DNA from: Paramoeba atlantica
Lineage: Eukaryota; Protista; Discosea
DNA length: 64,000 nucleotides
Assembly (NCBI GenBank): GCA_977017575.1
Contig: CDRNVI010000060.1
Coordinates: 434,001-498,000 of the forward strand
Direction of reading: 5' to 3'
Position 1 is the first letter of the stretch, and the number at the start of each line of letters is the position of its first letter. The notes beneath the pieces are model-generated. The model was not told the origin of the DNA. It did not search any database and saw only the letters and a list, made by a program, of their open reading frames with translations. A program made the translations under genes and the position numbers. Below are positions 12,698 through 57,962 of the stretch, piece by piece.

Positions 12698-12728
<31 letters not shown>

Positions 12729-12730
<2 letters not shown>

Positions 12731-12764
12731 TTAACGATAAAGATACAGTTTCTGTACCTTGTTG
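12729..12764 (+). other. Spliced-leader exon copy
   Basis: CTTTAACGATAAAGATACAGTTTCTGTACCTTGTTG, 48 nt before the ATG at 12813. Confidence 0.88.
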
Positions 12765-12812
12765 AATTATTTTCCTTATTCCATCTTTTTCCAGGTACGC
12801 GGTTCCTTTAAT

Positions 12813-26135: not shown

Positions 26136-27555
26136 GGCCAGGGGGGGCATTCGATGAAAATTCATCGAACGCACCGTGCGTTCGATGAATATTCATTGAA
26201 CGGCGTCCCGTTCGATGACCAGGCGTCCCGTTCGATGAATATTCATCGAACGGGCAGTGCGTTCGATGAATCATTCATCCAACGGGCACTGCTGCACGAA
26301 TTTTTCGTCTCGATTTTTTTTGGGGGGAATTTGAACATTACCATCTCGTTTACATGTCTGGAGGCAAGGCCCAACTGTCAGCGAAGCCCAAGTGTGCAAG
26401 CAAGGCCCCCGTCTGCGAGCAAGGCCCAACTGTGAGCGTAGCCCGCTTCTGGAGGCAAAAGCCCCCCTTTGCGAGCAAGGCCCAACTGTGAGCGTAGCCC
26501 TGGGACATAATTATATTTTTTGGCGACCCGCGCGCTCCATGCGGAGGTGGTGGATATTAGCACGGCGGGCGGATGAGTTGGCATCACGGCCTTCTTTTTC
26601 CATCGGGCACGAGGGAGCGGCAAAATCTCAGGAGCTACTCCTGATTCTTTTGCTTTGGAGCGTGTGAACACTCCCATGAAAGGTAAAAAAAGTAAATAAT
26701 CAACAAGGTACAGAAACTGTATCTTTATCGTTAAAGATTATTGTAAGTGTGCTTCTCTCTAGATTCGTGGGAAGCAATTTGCGAAGCCCAGCTACCTTGA
26801 TAACAAATTTTAGTACCCATTTTGGCCGCGCGGGGGCCCCCGCGTGAGCGGGGGTGCGCGCGGCCGCGAAACGGCGAGGGCCCGCGTGAGCGGGCCTGAG
26901 CCGTACCCCGCGTAGGATTCCCCTGTGCGTCGTTAGTGGGAAGCAATTTGCGAAGCTCACTGAATTTCGTAGTTTTCGCTACGCAGGCGTTGTCAACGTA
27001 TATAGTGAAGTGTAGGATACTGAACGCACGGAAAATGAAAATCAAAAAAAATTCTTGGGTGTTCCACAAAAGTCCTTGACATATGCAAAAGTCGTTGACT
27101 TGCACCGTAAATTTCCGTTCGTTGAGTACTCAACGAAAATCCGGCAGTTCGTTGAGTACAACGAACGTACCCCCAACCCAATATTTTTTGGGTCGCGCAC
27201 TGAGGACCTGTGTCTGCCACTTCCGCAGGTTTGTGTATTTGTAAGTTATGATTTCATCTTTGTAAACTTATGAGGCAATAGTTTTAAGAATCCTTCCGCT
27301 TTTTGATAACGTTTCGGATTTGTTTTTGTCTTACGGATCAAGGTAGCAGCCAGGAGCATGATGCAGACCGAAACGAGCTTTTTTTTTACAAAAAAAAATG
27401 CGTTTTCATTCATCGAACAGGACATCCTGTTCGATGAATGATTCATCGAACGGGTCGTACTGCAATCCATTCATCGAACAGGATGTCCTGTTCGATGAAT
27501 ATTCATCGAACGCACTGTCCGTTCGATGAATATTCATCGAGTGCCCCCCCTCCCC
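26136..27555. mobile_element. Non-autonomous TIR transposon, second terminal variant
   Basis: TIRs GGCCAGGGGGGGCATTCGATGA and GGGGAGGGGGGGCACTCGATGA; 9-bp TSD AATTGATCA (26127-26135 and 27556-27564); interior shared with 277-2751. Confidence 0.9.
26701..26736 (-). other. Spliced-leader exon copy inside the MITE
   Basis: Same SL sequence followed by a UTR and MGVFTRSKAKE. Confidence 0.85.
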
Positions 27556-33108: not shown

Positions 33109-33476
33109 TGAATACTTCCGTTGTCTGGCCACCTCAGACTGTGGCCTTCTACACAATGACATTATTACTTTATTTCTTCTATCATTGCTTCTTCTTTCAC
33201 TTTGCTTCTTCCACCTAGTTGCTTGCTATTTCCTAGCCAAAGACGAAGCGCTAGCCGAGTTACTCCCGTCCTCCTCTTCCTCTTACTTATTTGAAGCGTT
33301 TGGAATTGAGTATACGGGTATCTATAGAAAAAAAAATGTTAAGACCATATATATTGTTTTTTAACTTTTTGTTTATGACCAACTTTTTTTTTGTAAAGAT
33401 AAAGTTTTAGATAGAATGCCACAAGATGCAGAAGAGGAAGGACACCACGAGAACCCGCCGTCGGAAAACAATAACC

Positions 33477-33904
33477 ATGGATGTTCCACAAAAGTCCTTG
33501 ACTTATGCAAAAGTCCTTGATTTCCACCGTGAGTTTCCGTTCGTTGAGTACTCAACGAAAATCCGGCACTTCGTTGAGTACTCAACGAAAATCCTGTGTT
33601 TACCCCTTCCGCAGGATTGTCGCTCAAAATATTTATATGGATCAGTCAAAAACGCTTCGATGAAGATAAACTGAAGAAACGGTGAAATTCCTCTAGGGTC
33701 CTTCACAAAACACTTCGATGAAGCACCAAAAAAGTCAAAATGTCTATATGGATCCGCGAAAAACGTTTGCGTGAAGATTTGAAAAAATAAAAAAAAACTC
33801 AAAAACACCTTCGATGAAGATTCATCGAAAGTGTACAACTTTCAATGTGCTTCATCGAAAGTTGTACACTTTCGATGAAGCTTCATCGAAGGTCCCCCCT
33901 ACCC
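33477..33904. mobile_element. Right part of a MITE (duplicate of 38307-38734)
   Basis: Right TIR and flank CTATTTTT match at offset 4830. Confidence 0.85.
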
Positions 33905-33939
33905 CTATTTTTGAAGCGTTGACTTGAAGCAAAAGCTAA

Positions 33940-34530
33940 TCATAGTCGTAGACCTCCAACCCATTTTTCAGCCTGAATATATTGCCGCAATTGAGAAACT
34001 ACTGCGTATGCAGAATATTTCTCTAACTCAAGCTGAAAGGCTTCTCGTGTTGGCGTATAATCTAGACCTGCCCTCTTTGCCAATGTCTTTAGTAGCTGTT
34101 TAGTCTCCTCGTGTAAGACCCCACAATCAGTAATCGCAATGCAACGGAAACTTTCGGGATCTAAGCCTTTCTCCTTCACGTATTTATTATTCTTTCTGTC
34201 TTGGGCACTCTGGAGCAAGGCATTGCTACTTTGCTTTCGGTAGCTACTGCAACACGTATGAACTACGGTTAAATCGTATAAAATTTCACCAACGTCGGGC
34301 CACAAGATCGCAAGGTCTGGTCCGGATCTGATTCTACGAGCTCGGCATGGGTGTTGTTCTGCTGCTTCTGGGGAAATTGAACATTTGCACTTAGTGCAGA
34401 AGAATGACGTGTGAATTCGTGGCTCGATTGCACAAGGGAGACTGGCTTTGGAACACAGATCGGAAAGATATCGCACCAAATGAGAGTGTTTGCGTGTACA
34501 GTTCATTCCAGCGCATCGTGAGCAACCGGC
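33940..34530 (-). pseudogene. F2 C-terminal zinc finger and RLE fragment
   Basis: MNCTRKH..RRIRSGPDLAI..YDLTVVH; duplicate at 38770-39360. Confidence 0.88.
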
Positions 34531-35510
34531 TACGTGAGGAATGATTTTGTCCGCATGGTTGGCATTGGATCGAAATCCAAGTCTGCTTCCGTATGAGAAA
34601 ATCCTTGATTACTGGGAATTCCTTTAGCGTCCACATCAATTCTGCTTTTTGAATCCTTTCGATGTAGCCATTGTATTGAATAAACTCTCACATTAGAAGT
34701 TGGAGGAATGAACCCACGAAATTGCTCGCCGCATTTGTACCCTTCTATACCTTCATACTGGAGAGACATCCGTCCGATTCCGGAACGCTTCTTAACCGAC
34801 TTAACCACACCTTTCGATATATTCAGCTGCGAGGAATCGCTGAAGCACCATGCCATCAAGCACGAGTCCCCTTGTTTCGCCATTTTTGATGAATCCCAGA
34901 CGGTATCCGGTGCCAGTGGAAACTGCTCCGTTGGGTTTATCGACTTATTCAACTTCTCTATCATCTCGGCCTCCTTGGCAACTTCTATGACAGACTCTGT
35001 TTCAGCAGGAAGTTCAAAGTTCGGCATCGTGATATTGTTTTCGTCAACTACCTCGTGCAGTGTCGTAGACCCGTCAACCCTTCCCGTGCTCAATAGGGTG
35101 TCCTCAGGAGTTAAACAGTCGGCGTATGTCTGACATTCGACATCTGCGTCCTGCGTCAGCTGTTCGGCTGAAGTTTCATCATTCGTCGCAGTGATCGACT
35201 CAGTCGTCGTAGTGACTGGCCAAACGACGCTTGCCTGAGACTCGGTATTGACGTCCTGCATCCCTAACGTTTGTTCCGCTGAAGATTCTGTATTTATCGT
35301 AGTGATCGGGAGGAAATCTAACTTTGATATAGTTCTTCTTTCTTTTCCTCGAGCGGTTTCTGCAATTTGGCGTTCCCTTGTCTCACGCTCCTCGGCTGTA
35401 GGAACACCGTGCAGTGTCAGCAGCCCATTTCACACAGTCTTTCCGACCACTCCAGCAACCTTACCAAGTGTTTGAAGACGCGAAGATGGTTCAGAGTGGG
35501 GAATTTCATT
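34530..35510 (-). pseudogene. F3 N-terminal region; empty site for the IS30 insertion at 34866-34871
   Basis: Ends at PMPTMRT like the F3 pre-RT motif; matches 39360-39701 joined to 41123-41790. Confidence 0.8.
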
Positions 35511-36945
35511 ACTTGAGCTTATCGTTGTGTGATTTCCGCCGAAAAATAGTTAGATGCTTTTCAAGCTTGGCAAGAAGCAGCTCACTGACTCTGTCTGCTT
35601 CCCCTACGTAGGCTCCTAATGTTTTGACTGCCTTCTCCGCTATCTGAACGCCTTCATTCGCTAGACTTTCGGGTAGGCGAATATTGTTCAGACCGCTAAA
35701 CCATACACACTTTTGAGGGGCAAGGCAGATTTCTTTGCTTAGAAGAAGTTCTTTGAGGCGAACATAGGCAGCTGCAACAAGATCTTCCTCAGTTGACGCA
35801 ATATTGATATCATCAACATAAGCGTATATATGTAGCATGGGAAATTCTTGTGCAATTGTCTCCAGTATTGGCTGAAGAAAGGAGCAGAAGTATAGTGTCG
35901 ACAACGGCGACCCTTGGCGAACTCCAGCCGAACTTTCAACTGTTGAAAACAGTTCCCCGTTCTTTCCGTAAAAGAGGAGTTCAGACGCTGCCCCATATTC
36001 GGCAACAAATAGTCGCTGAAAAGGACGAAGGGCGCTATAAGCAAAAATTGCTTTTGCAATCTCGTCGCGTGAAGGGCTATTAAAAGCGTTCTTCATATCC
36101 AACGAGAGGATAGCACACCCTTCCATATATCGTCGATTGAGTTCGTGAACAATAGTCTCGCAGCCAGCGCGACTCATCACCCCATGCTGCATCGGCAGGA
36201 AAAGCTTTTCAAATTTATGTTCGTTACGCAGAAGAAGGATTAGTCCAGCCAACTTGAGAAAAATTTCTCCCATTGCCACCGGTCGAACGGCTTGAGCTGT
36301 TTTAGGGAGTGCAACTAAGCGTGCTCTCCGCAGTCTGCGCATTACATCCTTGGACAGCATTCCGTTAATTAAATCGCACATCATGTGGCTTAGACTCGTG
36401 CAACAGATCTCATCGTCCAAGAGCAGACGAATGATGGCCTCTGTGGTACCGGATGGACCTGGGGCGGCGCCTTTTGCGAGTCTCTTTCCTGCTTCTCGGA
36501 GTTCGTGGGGCGGGATACATGCTACCTTCGGGGCGTCGGTGGGAAGCTCAAAAGAAATCGGTAAAGATGGGTGTAGGTTTTGTAATTGAGACAATTTTTC
36601 TTCGTCCCCTAATGATGTTTCGGTGATGTCTTGATCTAACACGCGCGTCGCTTTCTTAATCGCTCCTTCCAAAACCAGTCGTGTTGCTTTTTTGACTGCT
36701 CTCAGATCTTTAGCCTTTTGCTCCACTTCACTGTTTCCTGCGTTCGTCTCCTGAGTTTGAATTGGGCGGCGACGACGCTTTTTTCCAATGAGATGGCGCA
36801 CTGTAGCCAACGAATGTTTCATTGCCGACATGGTTCTGTGCCAGATTGGATTTCGGTGGTCGTAAGAAGAATCTGCGTAATCCCGCATTATGTCACGATA
36901 GATAGAGACAACACAGGGCACAAACTCTGCACTGACAGTCCGCAC
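35509..36945 (-). pseudogene. F3 RT fragment
   Basis: RTVSAEF, RQGSPLSTLYFC, AYVDDI. Confidence 0.9.
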
Positions 36946-38734: not shown

Positions 38735-39701
38735 CTATTTTTGAAGCGTTGACTTGAAGCAAAAGCTAATCATAGTCGTAGACCTCCAACCCATTTTTCA
38801 GCCTGAATATATTGCCGCAATTGAGAAACTACTGCGTATGCAGAATATTTCTCTAACTCAAGCTGAAAGGCTTCTCGTGTTGGCGTATAATCTAGACCTG
38901 CCCTCTTTGCCAATGTCTTTAGTAGCTGTTTAGTCTCCTCGTGTAAGACCCCACAATCAGTAATCGCAATGCAACGGAAACTTTCGGGATCTAAGCCTTT
39001 CTCCTTCACGTATTTATTATTCTTTCTGTCTTGGGCACTCTGGAGCAAGGCATTGCTACTTTGCTTTCGGTAGCTACTGCAACACGTATGAACTACGGTT
39101 AAATCGTATAAAATTTCACCAACGTCGGGCCACAAGATCGCAAGGTCTGGTCCGGATCTGATTCTACGAGCTCGGCATGGGTGTTGTTCTGCTGCTTCTG
39201 GGGAAATTGAACATTTGCACTTAGTGCAGAAGAATGACGTGTGAATTCGTGGCTCGATTGCACAAGGGAGACTGGCTTTGGAACACAGATCGGAAAGATA
39301 TCGCACCAAATGAGAGTGTTTGCGTGTACAGTTCATTCCAGCGCATCGTGAGCAACCGGCTACGTGAGGAATGATTTTGTCCGCATGGTTGGCATTGGAT
39401 CGAAATCCAAGTCTGCTTCCGTATGAGAAAATCCTTGATTACTGGGAATTCCTTTAGCGTCCACATCAATTCTGCTTTTTGAATCCTTTCGATGTAGCCA
39501 TTGTATTGAATAAACTCTCACATTAGAAGTTGGAGGAATGAACCCACGAAATTGCTCGCCGCATTTGTACCCTTCTATACCTTCATACTGGAGAGACATC
39601 CGTCCGATTCCGGAACGCTTCTTAACCGACTTAACCACACCTTTCGATATATTCAGCTGCGAGGAATCGCTGAAGCACCATGCCATCAAGCACGAGTCCC
39701 C

Positions 39702-41122
39702 GGATGTTCAACTCCAGTGCACCACCCCATTGTGAACTCCAGCGCACCACTTTTTTCACCATAGTCGACCGTCATTCCTTTTTTCTGCGCCTCACCATAG
39801 TTGAACATCGTTCCTTTTTCCTTTCAACATAAAAACTTATCCAGAGTATTTAAAGAAAGTGTAATACAAGTGTAAGATCTGAGTAAGAAACTTTATTAGA
39901 CAAGAATTTCTTCACCTTTACAAAATGCTTAAATTTAATGTCATTAAATTTCCAACACTAGCAGACTAACTTTACAAGCTTTCTCACGTACCTTTGCTTA
40001 CTTAGCTTCTTTTACTTACGCAGTTCATTCACAAAATCCATTGGAGAACGATAATTTAATAATTTCCGAGGACGAGTGTTCAATTCCAATGCTGTTTTGT
40101 TTAATTCACTTTGGTTCAAATTCTCAAAAGATTCGGTTTTCTGATGGAATTGTCGGATCAAACCGTTTGCATGTTCCACAGACCCTTTCTCCCACGAATG
40201 ATATGGAGCGCAAAAGAAAGACTTGCATTTTAATTTTTTGTTTACTTCTTCATGGTGCCAGAATTCTGTTCCGTTGTCGTATGTGATTGTTTGAACCTTG
40301 TAATTCTTTAACCCGTCTACAATTTGTTTGCTTACCCCCTTCGCGTGCTTAGATTCCAACTTGCGAAGAACAAGGAAGCGACTCTTACGCTCGCACAGGG
40401 TAAGAATATATCCGGTATGTCCTCGACCCTCGACCAAGTCTGCTTCCCAATCGCCGTAGCGCCGACGCTTATTAACAATTTCTGGTCGATTTTCAAGTGG
40501 CGTTCGGTTGGGAATCGCGCTGCGATCAGGTCTGGTGCGACGACGGTATGGCCTCTTTCGCCGGATCCGCAAATGGGTGTACAACTTGCCGCCTAAGGAC
40601 GCGTTGCGACGAATATGGCGATATATGATAGAAGTCGAGGCGGTACGACAGCTACGGATCGTATTTGCAATCTGTTCCGGGCTGTGCTTCTTTTGAAGTC
40701 GAGAGCTGACTTCCTCTTCCAAAAGGCCTTGTATCTTGTGAGGCTTGACCTTTTTACACGAGAGGCTTCTTTTCGAAATGCGCTGTGCCCTCGTCCCCTC
40801 ATAGCGCTGACCCCTTCTTGCATTACGCGCCAACTCGCGACAAACAGTGCTGTGACTTTTGCCAATTATGCGAGCTATGCTTCGCCGACTCTCGCCAGAT
40901 GTAAAGAGTGATTGAATACGATTACGATCGTAATGACTGAGTCTTGAATAACGGCGCATTTGTAGTGTAGATCCGAAGGATATTATAAAATAATTCTTCT
41001 TTAAATAATTGATGGTGCATTGGAAATGAGAATACAGTTTTTAAGAAAAAGTGGTGCACTGGAAATGACAAGAAAATTATTTTTTGGGAAAAAAAGTGGT
41101 GCGTTGGTGTTCACAATCCACC
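39702..41122 (-). mobile_element. IS30-family element, 1421 bp
   Basis: 6-bp TSD GTCCCC (39696-39701 and 41123-41128); imperfect inverted ends; repeated CCA(G/A)(T/C)GCACCA motifs; empty site at 34866. Confidence 0.9.
40012..40959 (-). CDS. IS30-family DDE transposase (315 aa, intact)
   Basis: N-terminal HTH (IARIIGKSHSTVCRELARN); WEADLV, TYDNGTEF, EKGSVEHANGLIRQ, LNTRPRKLL. Confidence 0.95.
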   Translation of the reverse strand: MRRYSRLSHYDRNRIQSLFTSGESRRSIARIIGKSHSTVCRELARNARRGQRYEGTRAQRISKRSLSCKKVKPHKIQGLLEEEVSSRLQKKHSPEQIANTIRSCRTASTSIIYRHIRRNASLGGKLYTHLRIRRKRPYRRRTRPDRSAIPNRTPLENRPEIVNKRRRYGDWEADLVEGRGHTGYILTLCERKSRFLVLRKLESKHAKGVSKQIVDGLKNYKVQTITYDNGTEFWHHEEVNKKLKCKSFFCAPYHSWEKGSVEHANGLIRQFHQKTESFENLNQSELNKTALELNTRPRKLLNYRSPMDFVNELRK

Positions 41123-42526
41123 GTCCCCTTGTTTCGCCATTTTTGATGAATCCCAGACGGTATCCGGTGCCAGTGGAAACTGCTCCGTTGGGTTTATCGA
41201 CTTATTCAACTTCTCTATCATCTCGGCCTCCTTGGCAACTTCTATGACAGACTCTGTTTCAGCAGGAAGTTCAAAGTTCGGCATCGTAATATTGTTTTCG
41301 TCAACTACCTCGTGCAGTGTCGTAGACCCGTCAACCCTTCCCGTGCTCAATAGGGTGTCCTCAGGAGTTAAACAGTCGGCGTATGTCTGACATTCGACAT
41401 CTGCGTCCTGCGTCAGCTGTTCGGCTGAAGTTTCATCATTCGTCGCAGTGATCGACTCAGTCGTCGTAGTGACTGGCCAAACGACGCTTGCCTGAGACTC
41501 GGTATTGACGTCCTGCATCCCTAACGTTTGTTCCGCTGAAGATTCTGTATTTATCGTAGTGATCGGGAGGCAATCTAACTTTGATATCGTTCTTCTTTCT
41601 TTTCCTCGAGCGGTTTCTGCAATTTGGCGTTCCCTTGTCTCACGCTCCTCGGCTGTAGGAACACCGTGCAGTGTCAGCAGCCCATTTCACACAGTCTTTC
41701 CGACCACTCCAGCAACCTTACCGAGTGTTTGAAGACGCGAAGATGGTTCAGAGTGGGGAATTTCATTACTTGAGCTTATCGTTGTGTGATTTTCTTGTTG
41801 CTGTTTTCCAATGATCACTTTTATGCGAGGTTTGCGTGAGGGGATTGCCGTGGTCACTGAGTCTTCGCACTGCCTACGTGACGTTTCAGCTGCTTTCTCT
41901 TTTGTTTTCTTTTCTTCCTCTGCGCGTGCGTCCAATTGCTTTTTCAACTCACTGAATGACATGCGAAAATTTCTTTCTGTATCATCGTTTCCGGTCGGCG
42001 GCGGGATTGGACTGGGGAGCCTAAGCTCTATTGGGTTTTCGGCCAACGAGGAATCTGCTGGAGGGGACTTCGTCGCCGGAGGGGACGATAGCGATGGTGG
42101 TACTGCTGATTGCGCCTGCGACCGATAAGTATCTACGGGTGTGCGCGGGGGAGATGTGCATGTTAAATGGTCCGGCCGTTGCGGGGGTGGCGATTGTTGC
42201 GGAGCTGGAAGCATTTGTTGCGGTGGTGGCGGCGTTTGTTGCGGTGGTGGTGGTGTTCGTTGCTGCAGCCGTTTCGGGAGTGGCGATTGTTGCGGTGGTT
42301 TTCGTGGTGGACGTTGCTGTGTTCGCGCCGATGGCTGCAGTGGTGGCTGTGGTGGTGGTGATCGTTGCTGCGGCGGTGGTGGCGATCGTTGTGGTGGCGG
42401 TTGTGGCGATGGCGGCGGCAGTGGCGTTCCCGCGGGCAGTTTCTTCTTCCGGCGTGTGGGTGGAAGCGACTGGACGACGGGAGCTACCCCCGTCTCCTTC
42501 GCCTTGGCACGCGTCAGCATGCCCAT
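41123..42526 (-). pseudogene. F3 N-terminal region (Pro/Gln-rich, starts MGMLTRAKAKE), split by IS30
   Basis: Homologous start to 23986; continues into 39360-39701. Confidence 0.8.
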
Positions 42527-57149: not shown

Positions 57150-57885
57150 CATATCGCATAGTCTCATGTCTTTCACTTTGCCACATGCTTCGGGATGTCA
57201 TCAACGGCGAAGTTCCTCTGAATGTGCGAAAACGTCTAACCCGATGCAGAATCATCCTTCGATGCAGAATCATCACCCTTCGATGCAGAATCATCGCGCT
57301 AGCGAAACCTCAAAAAAAAAAAAAAAAAAAAAAAAATTTAGCGCAAAAGCTTAAGAAGCATGAAGCAATTTTTCGACGTCTAAAGCTCATGGGGTTGAAC
57401 AACATATCGCTGCTCTTACTCTCGAAAAGCGTAAACATCCGACACAGATACCACACTCGGGTACACACGCCAGCTGCTTCCGAAAAGCTATGTAAACAAT
57501 TCGATAAGGAGGTTGAAGAGGTAATGCGCACATGGCTCGGTAAAATGTCCGACAAACACATCTCCTGGTGTCGACTGCCCGTCAAGAAAGGTGGACTCGG
57601 TCTACCATCATCGGCCGAAACTCGCAATGCTGCTTACAATTCTTCGAAACGCGTTTCTCTAGAGCGCTGTAAAATCAACTCAGCTCGGTTAACGCATGAC
57701 GAAGAGATGATGCGGGAAAGCGAAGTAGTAAGTGATGATGGTGCCGTGACAGATGCAATGTTAAATCAGAAGGTATATCAGGAACTCACTAAGAAAAATG
57801 AGGAGGTAGCACCGTTGGTAAAAGCGTGCAGCGAGAAGGGGAACCACGACTGGCTACAAGGCAGAACGAGATGCATCCCATCCTC
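57150..57885 (+). pseudogene. F2 RT fragment joined through an A-run to an F3 post-RT fragment
   Basis: CLSLCHMLRDVING; LPVKKGGLGL. Confidence 0.75.
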
Positions 57886-57938
57886 CTTTAACGATAAAGA
57901 TACAGTTTCTGTACCTTGTTGGTTTCTGTACCTTGTTG
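57886..57938 (+). other. Tandem SL: full exon (57886-57921) plus 17-nt relict (57922-57938)
   Basis: CTTTAAC...CCTTGTTG followed by GTTTCTGTACCTTGTTG. Confidence 0.88.
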
Positions 57939-57962
57939 ATTTTTTATTGAGATTACTTAAAC

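What the first reader, a model, noticed from the sequence alone, without database searches (positions are those of the whole stretch)
39702..41122. Intact bacterial-type IS30 element transposed into a eukaryotic retrotransposon
A complete IS30-family DDE transposase sits inside an F3 ORF. The same ORF is uninterrupted at 34866-34871, so the junctions and a GTCCCC duplication can be read directly. The 6-bp TSD is longer than the 2-3 bp usual for bacterial IS30. The ends carry five copies of CCA(G/A)(T/C)GCACCA (two left, three right). The UTRs are AT-rich with no obvious Shine-Dalgarno, and a pyrimidine tract ending in CAG lies upstream of the ATG, a possible trans-splice acceptor. Inference: a horizontally acquired IS30 lineage active in a euglenozoan nucleus.
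Basis: partly seen in the sequence, partly recalled or inferred. Interest (0 to 1): 0.85.

Follow-up and report, generated by a model that had tools for sequence, protein, structure and literature searches.

The report
Bacterial-type IS30 transposon in a protist
A small jumping gene of the IS30 family, which the papers I searched report only from bacteria, has inserted into a repeated element in the nuclear DNA of a trypanosome-like protist, as one copy of a recently mobile family that keeps the family's usual 3-letter insertion scar.

Summary
An intact 315-aa IS30-family transposase (window 40012-40959, minus strand) lies in an element that splits a 243-aa ORF. That ORF is uninterrupted in a sister repeat at 34530-35261 and in at least 8 further copies elsewhere in the genome.

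One claim is wrong: the target duplication is 3 bp, not 6 bp.
- In 13 of 14 independent insertions the element starts three bases earlier (CCC GGATG...) and is flanked by matching 3-bp duplications.
- Empty sites predicted from that model exist for three other copies.
- The true element is 39699-41122 (1424 bp), with GTC duplicated. The hexamer GTCCCC is the GTC duplication plus the element's own CCC tip, which happens to match the target.

The host is a spliced-leader euglenozoan: an SL-like motif occurs about 480 times and KMP-11 is present.

The family has 6 independent full-length copies, all with open ORFs, several nearly identical. It also has deletion derivatives of 368-1356 bp with their own duplications, and many diverged subfamilies.

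The transposases nest in a bacterial clade dominated by Verrucomicrobiota (42-45% identity). One such bacterial element shares the GGYGGATT tips and the 3-bp duplication.

Expression and trans-splicing could not be tested because no RNA run was found. This scan has already noted the same IS30 lineage many times elsewhere in this genome. I found no paper describing it.

The parts
39696..39698 (.). Left copy of the 3-bp target site duplication (GTC)
   Evidence: the same 3 bp stand at 41123-41125. The empty site at 34866-34868 has one copy.
39699..41122 (-). Whole IS30-family element, 1424 bp (the transposase reads on the minus strand)
   Evidence: Boundaries come from 14 independent insertions and from predicted empty sites of other copies. 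1424 + 3 = 1427 bp is the length skipped in the empty form.
39699..39725 (+). Terminal inverted repeat far from the transposase start (27 bp, begins CCCGGATG)
   Evidence: 20 of 27 positions match the other end (my alignment by eye of the ends printed). CCC is constant in all copies whatever the flank.
39739..39749 (+). Extra subterminal copy of the CCARYGCACCA motif; the terminal copy is at 39714-39724
   Evidence: 5 matches in the window against 0.15 expected.
39699..40011 (-). 3' untranslated part, 313 nt, 37% GC
40012..40959 (-). Transposase ORF, 315 aa, with HTH_38 and a DDE domain (D174, D228, E262)
   Evidence: This copy has two private replacements, R65S and T111I.
40960..41122 (-). 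5' leader, 163 nt, 32% GC, with pyrimidine tracts; AG at 41060-41059 is a candidate trans-splice acceptor (untested)
   Evidence: No RNA data were available.
41013..41062 (-). Two extra subterminal copies of the motif (41013-41023 and 41052-41062)
41096..41122 (-). Terminal inverted repeat next to the transposase start (27 bp). It reads GGTGGATTGTGA here and GGCGGATTGTCA in the other copies. The motif copy is at 41097-41107.
   Evidence: The tip GGYGGATT is shared with a Verrucomicrobial IS.
41123..41125 (.). Right copy of the 3-bp target site duplication (GTC)
34866..34868 (.). Unoccupied target (GTC) in the sister repeat, inside the intact 243-aa ORF 34530-35261 (-)
   Evidence: At least 8 further uninterrupted copies lie on other contigs.
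41111..41518 (-). Upstream half of the interrupted host-repeat ORF; the downstream half is 39360-39689 (-)

Best explanation
Window 39699-41122 is one copy of a 1424-bp DNA transposon of the IS30 family living in the nuclear genome of a spliced-leader (kinetoplastid-like) euglenozoan.

Anatomy (shown):
- Its single gene encodes a 315-aa transposase with an N-terminal helix-turn-helix domain and a DDE catalytic core.
- The element ends in 27-bp imperfect inverted repeats.
- The inner half of each repeat, the motif CCARYGCACCAC, recurs three more times subterminally.

This insertion (shown):
- The copy landed in one member of a multi-copy host repeat, split a 243-aa ORF, and duplicated 3 bp (GTC).

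Mechanism (inferred):
- By analogy with IS30 and ISApl1, the transposase binds the repeated motif, joins the two ends into a circular or end-to-end junction (copy-out), and integrates with a 3-bp stagger (paste-in).
- Because this host transcribes long gene arrays without gene-specific promoters, the gene is probably expressed by read-through transcription. A spliced leader would then be added at an AG behind a pyrimidine tract in the 163-nt leader.

Origin and status:
- The lineage came from bacteria. The closest relatives are IS30 elements of aquatic Verrucomicrobiota.
- It diversified in this genome and was mobile recently.
- This copy has six private changes. Two are in the end tip and two hit conserved residues, so it may no longer move by itself.
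For: Family:
- IS30 equivalog 241 bits against a cut-off of 80; IS481 only 53 bits against 224.
- HTH_38 plus rve domains.
- D174, D228 and E262 are invariant, with 33 residues between the last two.

Insertion:
- The empty sister site has flanks 99.4-99.6% identical.
- At least 8 more uninterrupted copies of the target lie on other contigs.

Boundaries and 3-bp TSD:
- 13 of 14 independent insertions match.
- Empty sites predicted on this model were found for three other copies: 5 exact 34-nt hits for the C9 copy, one hit with 1 mismatch for the C21 copy, and 4 hits with 2 mismatches for the C83 copy.

Host:
- The SL-like motif occurs 481 times against 5 in the control, and SL-headed retroelements lie in the window itself.
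- KMP-11 scores 151 bits.
- RT ORFs run through the whole window.

Residency and activity:
- 52 DNA matches and 132 protein matches spread over dozens of contigs.
- All 7 full-length copies have open ORFs. These are 6 independent loci, because the C58 and C10 copies lie in regions 99.93% identical. Three copies have identical ORFs.
- dN/dS is 0.16-0.22 between sublineages.
- Deletion derivatives of 368-1356 bp have their own TSDs.
- Other copies are themselves split by a different transposon.

Origin:
- Both in-genome clades sit inside a 98%-supported clade with Verrucomicrobiota-dominated sequences.
- The best bacterial identities are 42-45%, plasmid IS30 elements reach at most 41%, and metagenome sequences at most 48-49%.
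- A Verrucomicrobial IS of 1214 bp has a 3-bp TSD and GGTGGATT / GGCGAATT tips.

Mechanism of the family:
- Copy-out-paste-in through a circle, as described in PMC9927407.
Against: - No RNA evidence. No RNA run holds the stretch, so transcription, trans-splicing and translation are unproven.
- No read or unitig bridges the two junctions of this copy.
- No end-to-end junction or tandem dimer is present in the assembly.
- The transposition chemistry is inferred from bacterial relatives.
- A single origin of the in-genome clades has only weak support, 65-87.
- This copy has changes at positions 3 and 11 of one end and at the conserved residues R65 and T111.
Confidence: 0.88

Rival explanations
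1. One reading: the element is 1421 bp (39702-41122) and integrates with a 6-bp stagger, an altered geometry compared with bacterial IS30.
For: GTCCCC stands on both sides of this copy and once in the empty site. For this copy alone, both parses fit the 1427 bp of added DNA.
Against: - CCC precedes GGATG in every copy whatever the flank. It is not repeated on the right side in any other copy.
- 13 of 14 insertions show a matching 3-bp duplication outside the CCC.
- Empty sites built without the CCC are found exactly.
Confidence: 0.02
2. The element belongs to a bacterium (contaminant, prey or endosymbiont) and was joined to eukaryotic DNA by misassembly.
For: - The transposase is fully bacterial in type.
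- The junctions of this copy are not bridged by the unitigs available.
Against: - Copies and fragments lie on dozens of large contigs, with different flanks and clean 3-bp TSDs.
- The targets are multi-copy eukaryotic repeats whose empty sites are preserved.
- Some copies carry nested insertions of another transposon.
- No sequence more than 49% identical turned up in the public protein, genome, plasmid or metagenome searches I ran, except in one other assembly that also carries polyubiquitin and RT genes.
Confidence: 0.01
3. The lineage is an old eukaryotic transposon superfamily inherited vertically, not a transfer from bacteria. Alternatively, bacteria received it from eukaryotes.
For: - The in-genome clades are deep: 40-60% identity to each other, on long stem branches of 0.47 and 0.68.
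- The nearest bacterial sequences are only 42-49% identical.
Against: - The in-genome clades nest inside a bacterial clade, with further bacterial IS30 groups outside it.
- No other eukaryote-like relative appeared among 1760 protein hits or in the metagenome scan.
- A survey of 430 eukaryote genomes with all IS families found only IS607 (PMC3673617).
Confidence: 0.08
4. The family is now extinct, and this copy is an inert relic whose open ORF merely reflects its youth.
For: - This copy has private changes in one end tip and at two conserved residues.
- There is no RNA evidence and no end-to-end junction in the assembly.
Against: - Three loci share an identical ORF, and five copies differ by 0-8 of 1424 bases.
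- Short derivatives with intact ends and their own TSDs exist.
- Purifying selection acts between sublineages.
Confidence: 0.2

Closest known systems
IS30-family elements of Verrucomicrobiota (for example three identical 1214-bp copies on one 4.18-Mb MAG contig, loci L080-L082)
   Same: - One ORF of 315-318 aa with the same domains.
- 3-bp target duplication.
- Inverted repeats of about 25-27 bp starting GGYGGATT.
- Same 98%-supported clade in the tree.
   Different: - Only 42-45% protein identity.
- The bacterial element is 210 bp shorter, with an 82-nt leader against 163 nt.
- It carries its inner-repeat motif once per end, whereas the protist element carries its motif five times in all.
- The host is a bacterium.
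IS30, ISApl1 and IS1655 (the studied IS30-family members)
   Same: - DDE transposase with an N-terminal helix-turn-helix.
- 2-3 bp duplications.
- Copy-out-paste-in through a circle with a few host bases between the ends.
- Preference for imperfect palindromes.
- Subterminal sequences that modulate transposition (PMC9927407 and the papers it cites).
   Different: - At most 41% identity to plasmid-borne members.
- The circle intermediate is not shown here.
- Nuclear eukaryotic host.
- Deletion derivatives resembling eukaryotic MITEs.
IS607-like and IS5-like sequences in eukaryotes (Gilbert and Cordaux 2013; Gladyshev and Arkhipova 2009, as cited there)
   Same: Bacterial insertion-sequence families found integrated in eukaryotic nuclear genomes after horizontal transfer (PMC3673617).
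   Different: - Those cases involve a serine-recombinase family and a single silent IS5-like copy.
- Here a DDE IS30 lineage has many intact copies, several subfamilies and non-autonomous derivatives.
Other IS30-derived subfamilies of this same genome
   Same: Same transposase family and same host. Clades 57-60% and 40-46% identical to this copy were found here too.
   Different: The earlier notes describe ends rebuilt as long arrays of about 20-bp repeats. This subfamily keeps short, bacterial-style ends with only three extra motif copies. I did not examine the ends of the other subfamilies.

Membership tests
IS30 family (insertion sequences) | Transposase matches the family profile above its curated threshold | tested here: met
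   NCBIfam NF033563 scores 241 bits against a cut-off of 80 and covers 267 of 267 profile positions.
IS30 family (insertion sequences) | N-terminal helix-turn-helix DNA-binding domain followed by a DDE (RNase H-like) domain | tested here: met
   HTH_38 at residues 3-46 (46 bits). rve at residues 167-255 (30.5 bits, just under Pfam's cut-off of 32.6).
IS30 family (insertion sequences) | Catalytic D, D, E with 33 residues between the second D and the E (spacing recalled from ISfinder, not checked in a paper here) | tested here: met
   D174, D228 and E262 are invariant in 27 aligned sequences, and 33 residues separate D228 and E262.
IS30 family (insertion sequences) | Short element (about 1.0-1.7 kb) with one ORF and 20-30 bp terminal inverted repeats | tested here: met
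   1424 bp, one 315-aa ORF, 27-bp ends. The 20 of 27 matching positions are my own count by eye.
IS30 family (insertion sequences) | Target site duplication of 2-3 bp | tested here: met
   A 3-bp duplication in 13 of 14 independent insertions. Predicted empty sites were found.
IS30 family (insertion sequences) | Transposition through joined ends (circle or tandem dimer) with a few bases between them | tested here: inconclusive
   The assembly has no right-end/left-end junction with 0-12 bases between. An assembly would rarely hold such a transient form. It needs PCR or raw long reads.
IS30 family (insertion sequences) | Phylogenetic placement among bacterial IS30 transposases | tested here: met
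   It nests in a 98%-supported clade with Verrucomicrobiota-dominated IS30 sequences. Neisseria, Bacteroidota and candidate-phyla IS30 groups lie outside.
IS481 / IS3-related eukaryotic groups (Ginger, IS3EU) | Transposase closest to IS481/IS3 or integrase profiles | tested here: not met
   IS481 scores 53 bits against a cut-off of 224, and IS21 scores 35 against 160.

The most novel reading that the evidence does not exclude
A bacterial insertion sequence crossed into a euglenozoan nucleus and became a self-sustaining transposon family that is still mobile. It could do so because this host needs no gene-specific promoter or intron signals: read-through transcription plus spliced-leader addition at a pyrimidine tract in the leader would be enough to express a bacterial gene. 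If so, this would be the first eukaryotic IS30 lineage. It would also be a natural test of what limits prokaryote-to-eukaryote transposon transfer.
Probability: 0.5. Interest if true: 0.85.

Novelty: new variant of a known kind. Interest (0 to 1): 0.78.

Why it matters
Transfers of bacterial insertion sequences into eukaryotes are thought to be very rare. A survey of 430 eukaryote genomes with all IS families recovered only IS607 (PMC3673617).

Here an IS30 lineage has integrated and also multiplied. It produced short non-autonomous derivatives and split into subfamilies, while this subfamily kept the bacterial end tips and the 3-bp duplication. That gives a matched bacterial and eukaryotic pair for asking what a prokaryotic transposon needs in order to work in a nucleus: nuclear entry, expression signals and extra binding sites. 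It also offers a compact one-protein transposon that might work as a tool in kinetoplastid-like organisms.

Correcting the duplication from 6 to 3 bp matters because it shows that the integration chemistry did not change.

Tried and rejected
- **Reads.** Only Logan unitigs of three DNA-like runs from one study were available. None bridges a junction of this copy. They show only the empty form, which the sister repeats explain, and a junction of another copy. The one possible RNA run held nothing.
- **Rfam on the window.** No family matched.
- **Eukaryotic SSU rRNA search in the genome.** The tool failed.
- **Paraflagellar rod family.** No match, and the controls were silent too, so this says nothing.
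- **End-to-end junction pattern.** None in the assembly.
- **SL-fused retrocopies of the transposase mRNA,** which would have marked the splice acceptor. The truncated copies I inspected are simply broken or interrupted by another transposon.
- **Orientation of full-length copies relative to flanking ORFs.** With only 1.5-kb flanks this was inconclusive.
- **GC and GC3 as a sign of amelioration.** Uninformative. The element has 46% GC3, like the host, while the Verrucomicrobial relatives range from 41 to 75%.
- **Host species.** The sequencing runs carry coded names, and the SL motif is in no paper searched.
- **Single versus double acquisition.** Not resolved; support is 65-87.

Full report
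**What is there**

The minus strand of window 40012-40959 holds an uninterrupted 315-aa ORF.
- It scores 241 bits on NCBI's IS30 equivalog model (cut-off 80) over the whole profile. IS481 scores only 53 bits against a cut-off of 224.
- It has an N-terminal HTH_38 domain and an integrase-core (rve) domain.
- In an alignment with 26 database relatives, D174, D228 and E262 are invariant, and 33 residues separate the last two. I recall that spacing as typical for IS30 transposases.

The motif CCARYGCACCA occurs exactly five times in the 64-kb window: two near the left end and three near the right end of the element. Chance would give 0.15.

**The insertion**

The flanks of the element are repeated 4.8 kb upstream.
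- 38296-39701 matches 33465-34871 at 99.6%.
- 41123-41792 matches 34866-35535 at 99.4%.

In that sister copy the sequence runs straight through and forms a 243-aa ORF at 34530-35261. In the filled copy this ORF is split into 41111-41518 and 39360-39689. The 850 bp around the target recur uninterrupted on at least eight other contigs at 96-99% identity. So the element landed in one member of a multi-copy host repeat.

The split ORF has no family match. It lies downstream of a reverse-transcriptase ORF in the sister copy only. 'Retrotransposon ORF' is therefore plausible but not shown.

**The duplication is 3 bp, not 6**

The genome (45.7 Mb, 248 contigs) gives 52 DNA matches to the element.

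When CCC is taken as the element's tip, 13 of 14 independent insertions are flanked by a perfect 3-bp direct repeat: AAG, ATC, TCC, AGG, AAA, GGT, AAC and others. The chance of a match is 1 in 64 each.

I then built the empty sites this model predicts (left flank, one copy of the 3 bp, right flank, no CCC) and searched the genome.
- The C9 copy gave five exact 34-nt matches and three more with one mismatch.
- The C21 copy gave one match with one mismatch.
- The C83 copy gave four matches with two mismatches.
- The C29 copy gave none.

The element in the window is therefore 39699-41122 (1424 bp) with GTC duplicated. The hexamer GTCCCC arises because the target GTC happened to be followed by CCC, the same three bases as the element's tip. 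The integration geometry is the canonical one for the family.

**The host**
- The 3' part of a kinetoplastid- or diplonemid-type spliced leader (CAGTTTCTGTACCTTGTTG plus GT) occurs 481 times in the genome, against 5 for the reversed control.
- In the window itself this motif heads several retroelements, directly after poly(A) runs.
- KMP-11 is encoded twice, at 150-151 bits.
- The window is filled with reverse-transcriptase ORFs.
- The paraflagellar rod family was not found, but that search was silent everywhere, so it says nothing.

I call the host a spliced-leader euglenozoan, kinetoplastid-like. Its species name was not available.

The assembly holds near-identical contig pairs. For example, C58 and C10 are 99.93% identical over 4.4 kb around one copy. 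The seven full-length copies therefore stand for six independent insertions.

**State of the family**
- All seven full-length copies have open 315-aa ORFs.
- Three loci share an identical ORF, and five copies differ from each other at 2-8 of 1424 positions.
- Two older copies differ at 26-45 positions. dN/dS against the main group is 0.16-0.22 for one and 0.56-0.66 for the other.
- Deletion derivatives of 368, 521, 813, about 985, 1207 and 1356 bp keep both ends, and all but one have their own 3-bp duplications. By the query ranges, the shortest keep about 157 nt of one end and 127 nt of the other, enough to hold all five motif copies.
- Some copies have been split by a different transposon with CAGGGGTG ends.
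- A protein search finds 132 matches, including intact genes 55-61% and 39-46% identical to this one.

This is a resident, diversified and recently mobile family.

The window copy itself differs from the majority sequence at six places. Two are at positions 3 and 11 of the end next to the gene. Two change residues that are conserved in the family (R65S, T111I). Two lie in the 3' part. Its own competence is therefore uncertain.

**Origin**

Outside this organism the best protein hits are 44-49% identical. The exceptions are two proteins from one other assembly whose contigs also carry polyubiquitin and RT genes, so probably the same organism.
- Named genomes give 42-45%, mostly Verrucomicrobiota such as Verrucomicrobiales, Akkermansiaceae, Opitutales and Puniceicoccaceae.
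- Plasmid-borne IS30 elements reach at most 41%.
- JGI metagenome contigs reach at most 48%.

In a maximum-likelihood tree of 102 sequences, the in-genome sequences form two strongly supported clades (99 and 100). Together with the Verrucomicrobiota-dominated group they make one clade with support 98. Neisseria, Bacteroidota and candidate-phyla IS30 groups lie outside it. Whether the two in-genome clades share one entry is open; support is 65-87.

A Verrucomicrobial element present three times on one 4.18-Mb contig is 1214 bp long. It makes 3-bp duplications, and its ends start GGTGGATT and GGCGAATT. The protist family's end starts GGCGGATT. The tips have thus survived the transfer. The bacterial element carries its inner-repeat motif once per end and has an 82-nt leader. 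The protist element carries its motif five times and has a 163-nt leader and a 313-nt tail.

**How it most likely works**

Shown:
- the gene and its domains;
- the ends and their motif copies;
- the 3-bp duplication;
- the empty sites;
- the multiplication of the family and its derivatives.

Inferred:
- From studied IS30 members (PMC9927407), the transposase joins the two ends with a few host bases between them (copy-out) and integrates that junction (paste-in). No such junction is in the assembly, which is expected for a transient form.
- From host biology, the gene is transcribed by read-through in a polycistronic unit and receives a spliced leader. The leader has pyrimidine tracts, one ending in CAG at 41061-41059. 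That CAG is also part of the repeated end motif, so its presence is not independent evidence.

No RNA data could be laid.

**Literature and earlier notes**

A search of 430 eukaryote genomes with all IS families found only IS607-like sequences. It cites a single IS5-like copy in a rotifer (PMC3673617). Searches combining IS30 with eukaryote, kinetoplastid, protist and nuclear genome returned nothing relevant.

This scan has noted the same IS30 lineage many times on other DNA of this genome, including a 1424-letter copy of what appears to be this subfamily. The present report adds:
- the correction of the duplication length;
- the predicted-empty-site test;
- the Verrucomicrobial sister group with shared tips;
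- the private changes of this copy.

**Verdict**

This is a real and correctly located IS30-family insertion in a euglenozoan nuclear genome, with canonical family features. The 6-bp duplication is a misreading, and expression is untested.

Noticed in passing
window 12700-12812, 57857-57940; minus strand near 26720, 20930 and 1710: Retroelement copies begin with a poly(A) run followed by an SL-like sequence (..CTTTAACGATAAAGATACAGTTTCTGTACCTTGTTG). At 57902 the last part is repeated in tandem. It looks as if the elements were copied from trans-spliced RNA or insert next to leader sequences.
   Followed up: partly
L012-L016 (G000 C56:19646-26411 and C54:317772-323751): Copies of this IS30 element are split at the same internal position by another transposon whose ends read CAGGGGTGCAAATCAGATGCTGGGGGG. 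This is a nested insertion of a second DNA transposon family.
   Followed up: no
L003 vs L004 (C58 vs C10), L010 vs L011 (C43 vs C19), L012 vs L013 (C56 vs C54): The assembly holds pairs of contig regions 98-99.9% identical, including the same insertions. They look like haplotigs or very recent duplications, so raw copy counts overstate the number of independent insertions.
   Followed up: partly
window 34300-34549; G000 C192 and C85: The first 140-250 bases of the stretch next to the target repeat belong to a tandem array with a period of about 1.86 kb. It fills much of contigs C192 and C85.
   Followed up: no
whole genome (G000): KMP-11 is present twice at full length, but the Pfam paraflagellar rod family gave no candidate at all.
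   Followed up: no
13 insertion sites of the family (L001-L028): The base before the 3-bp duplication is a purine in 10 of 13 sites, and the base after it is a pyrimidine in 11 of 13. These are my own counts from the flanks printed. This hints at a weak palindromic target preference, as reported for bacterial IS30 members.
   Followed up: partly
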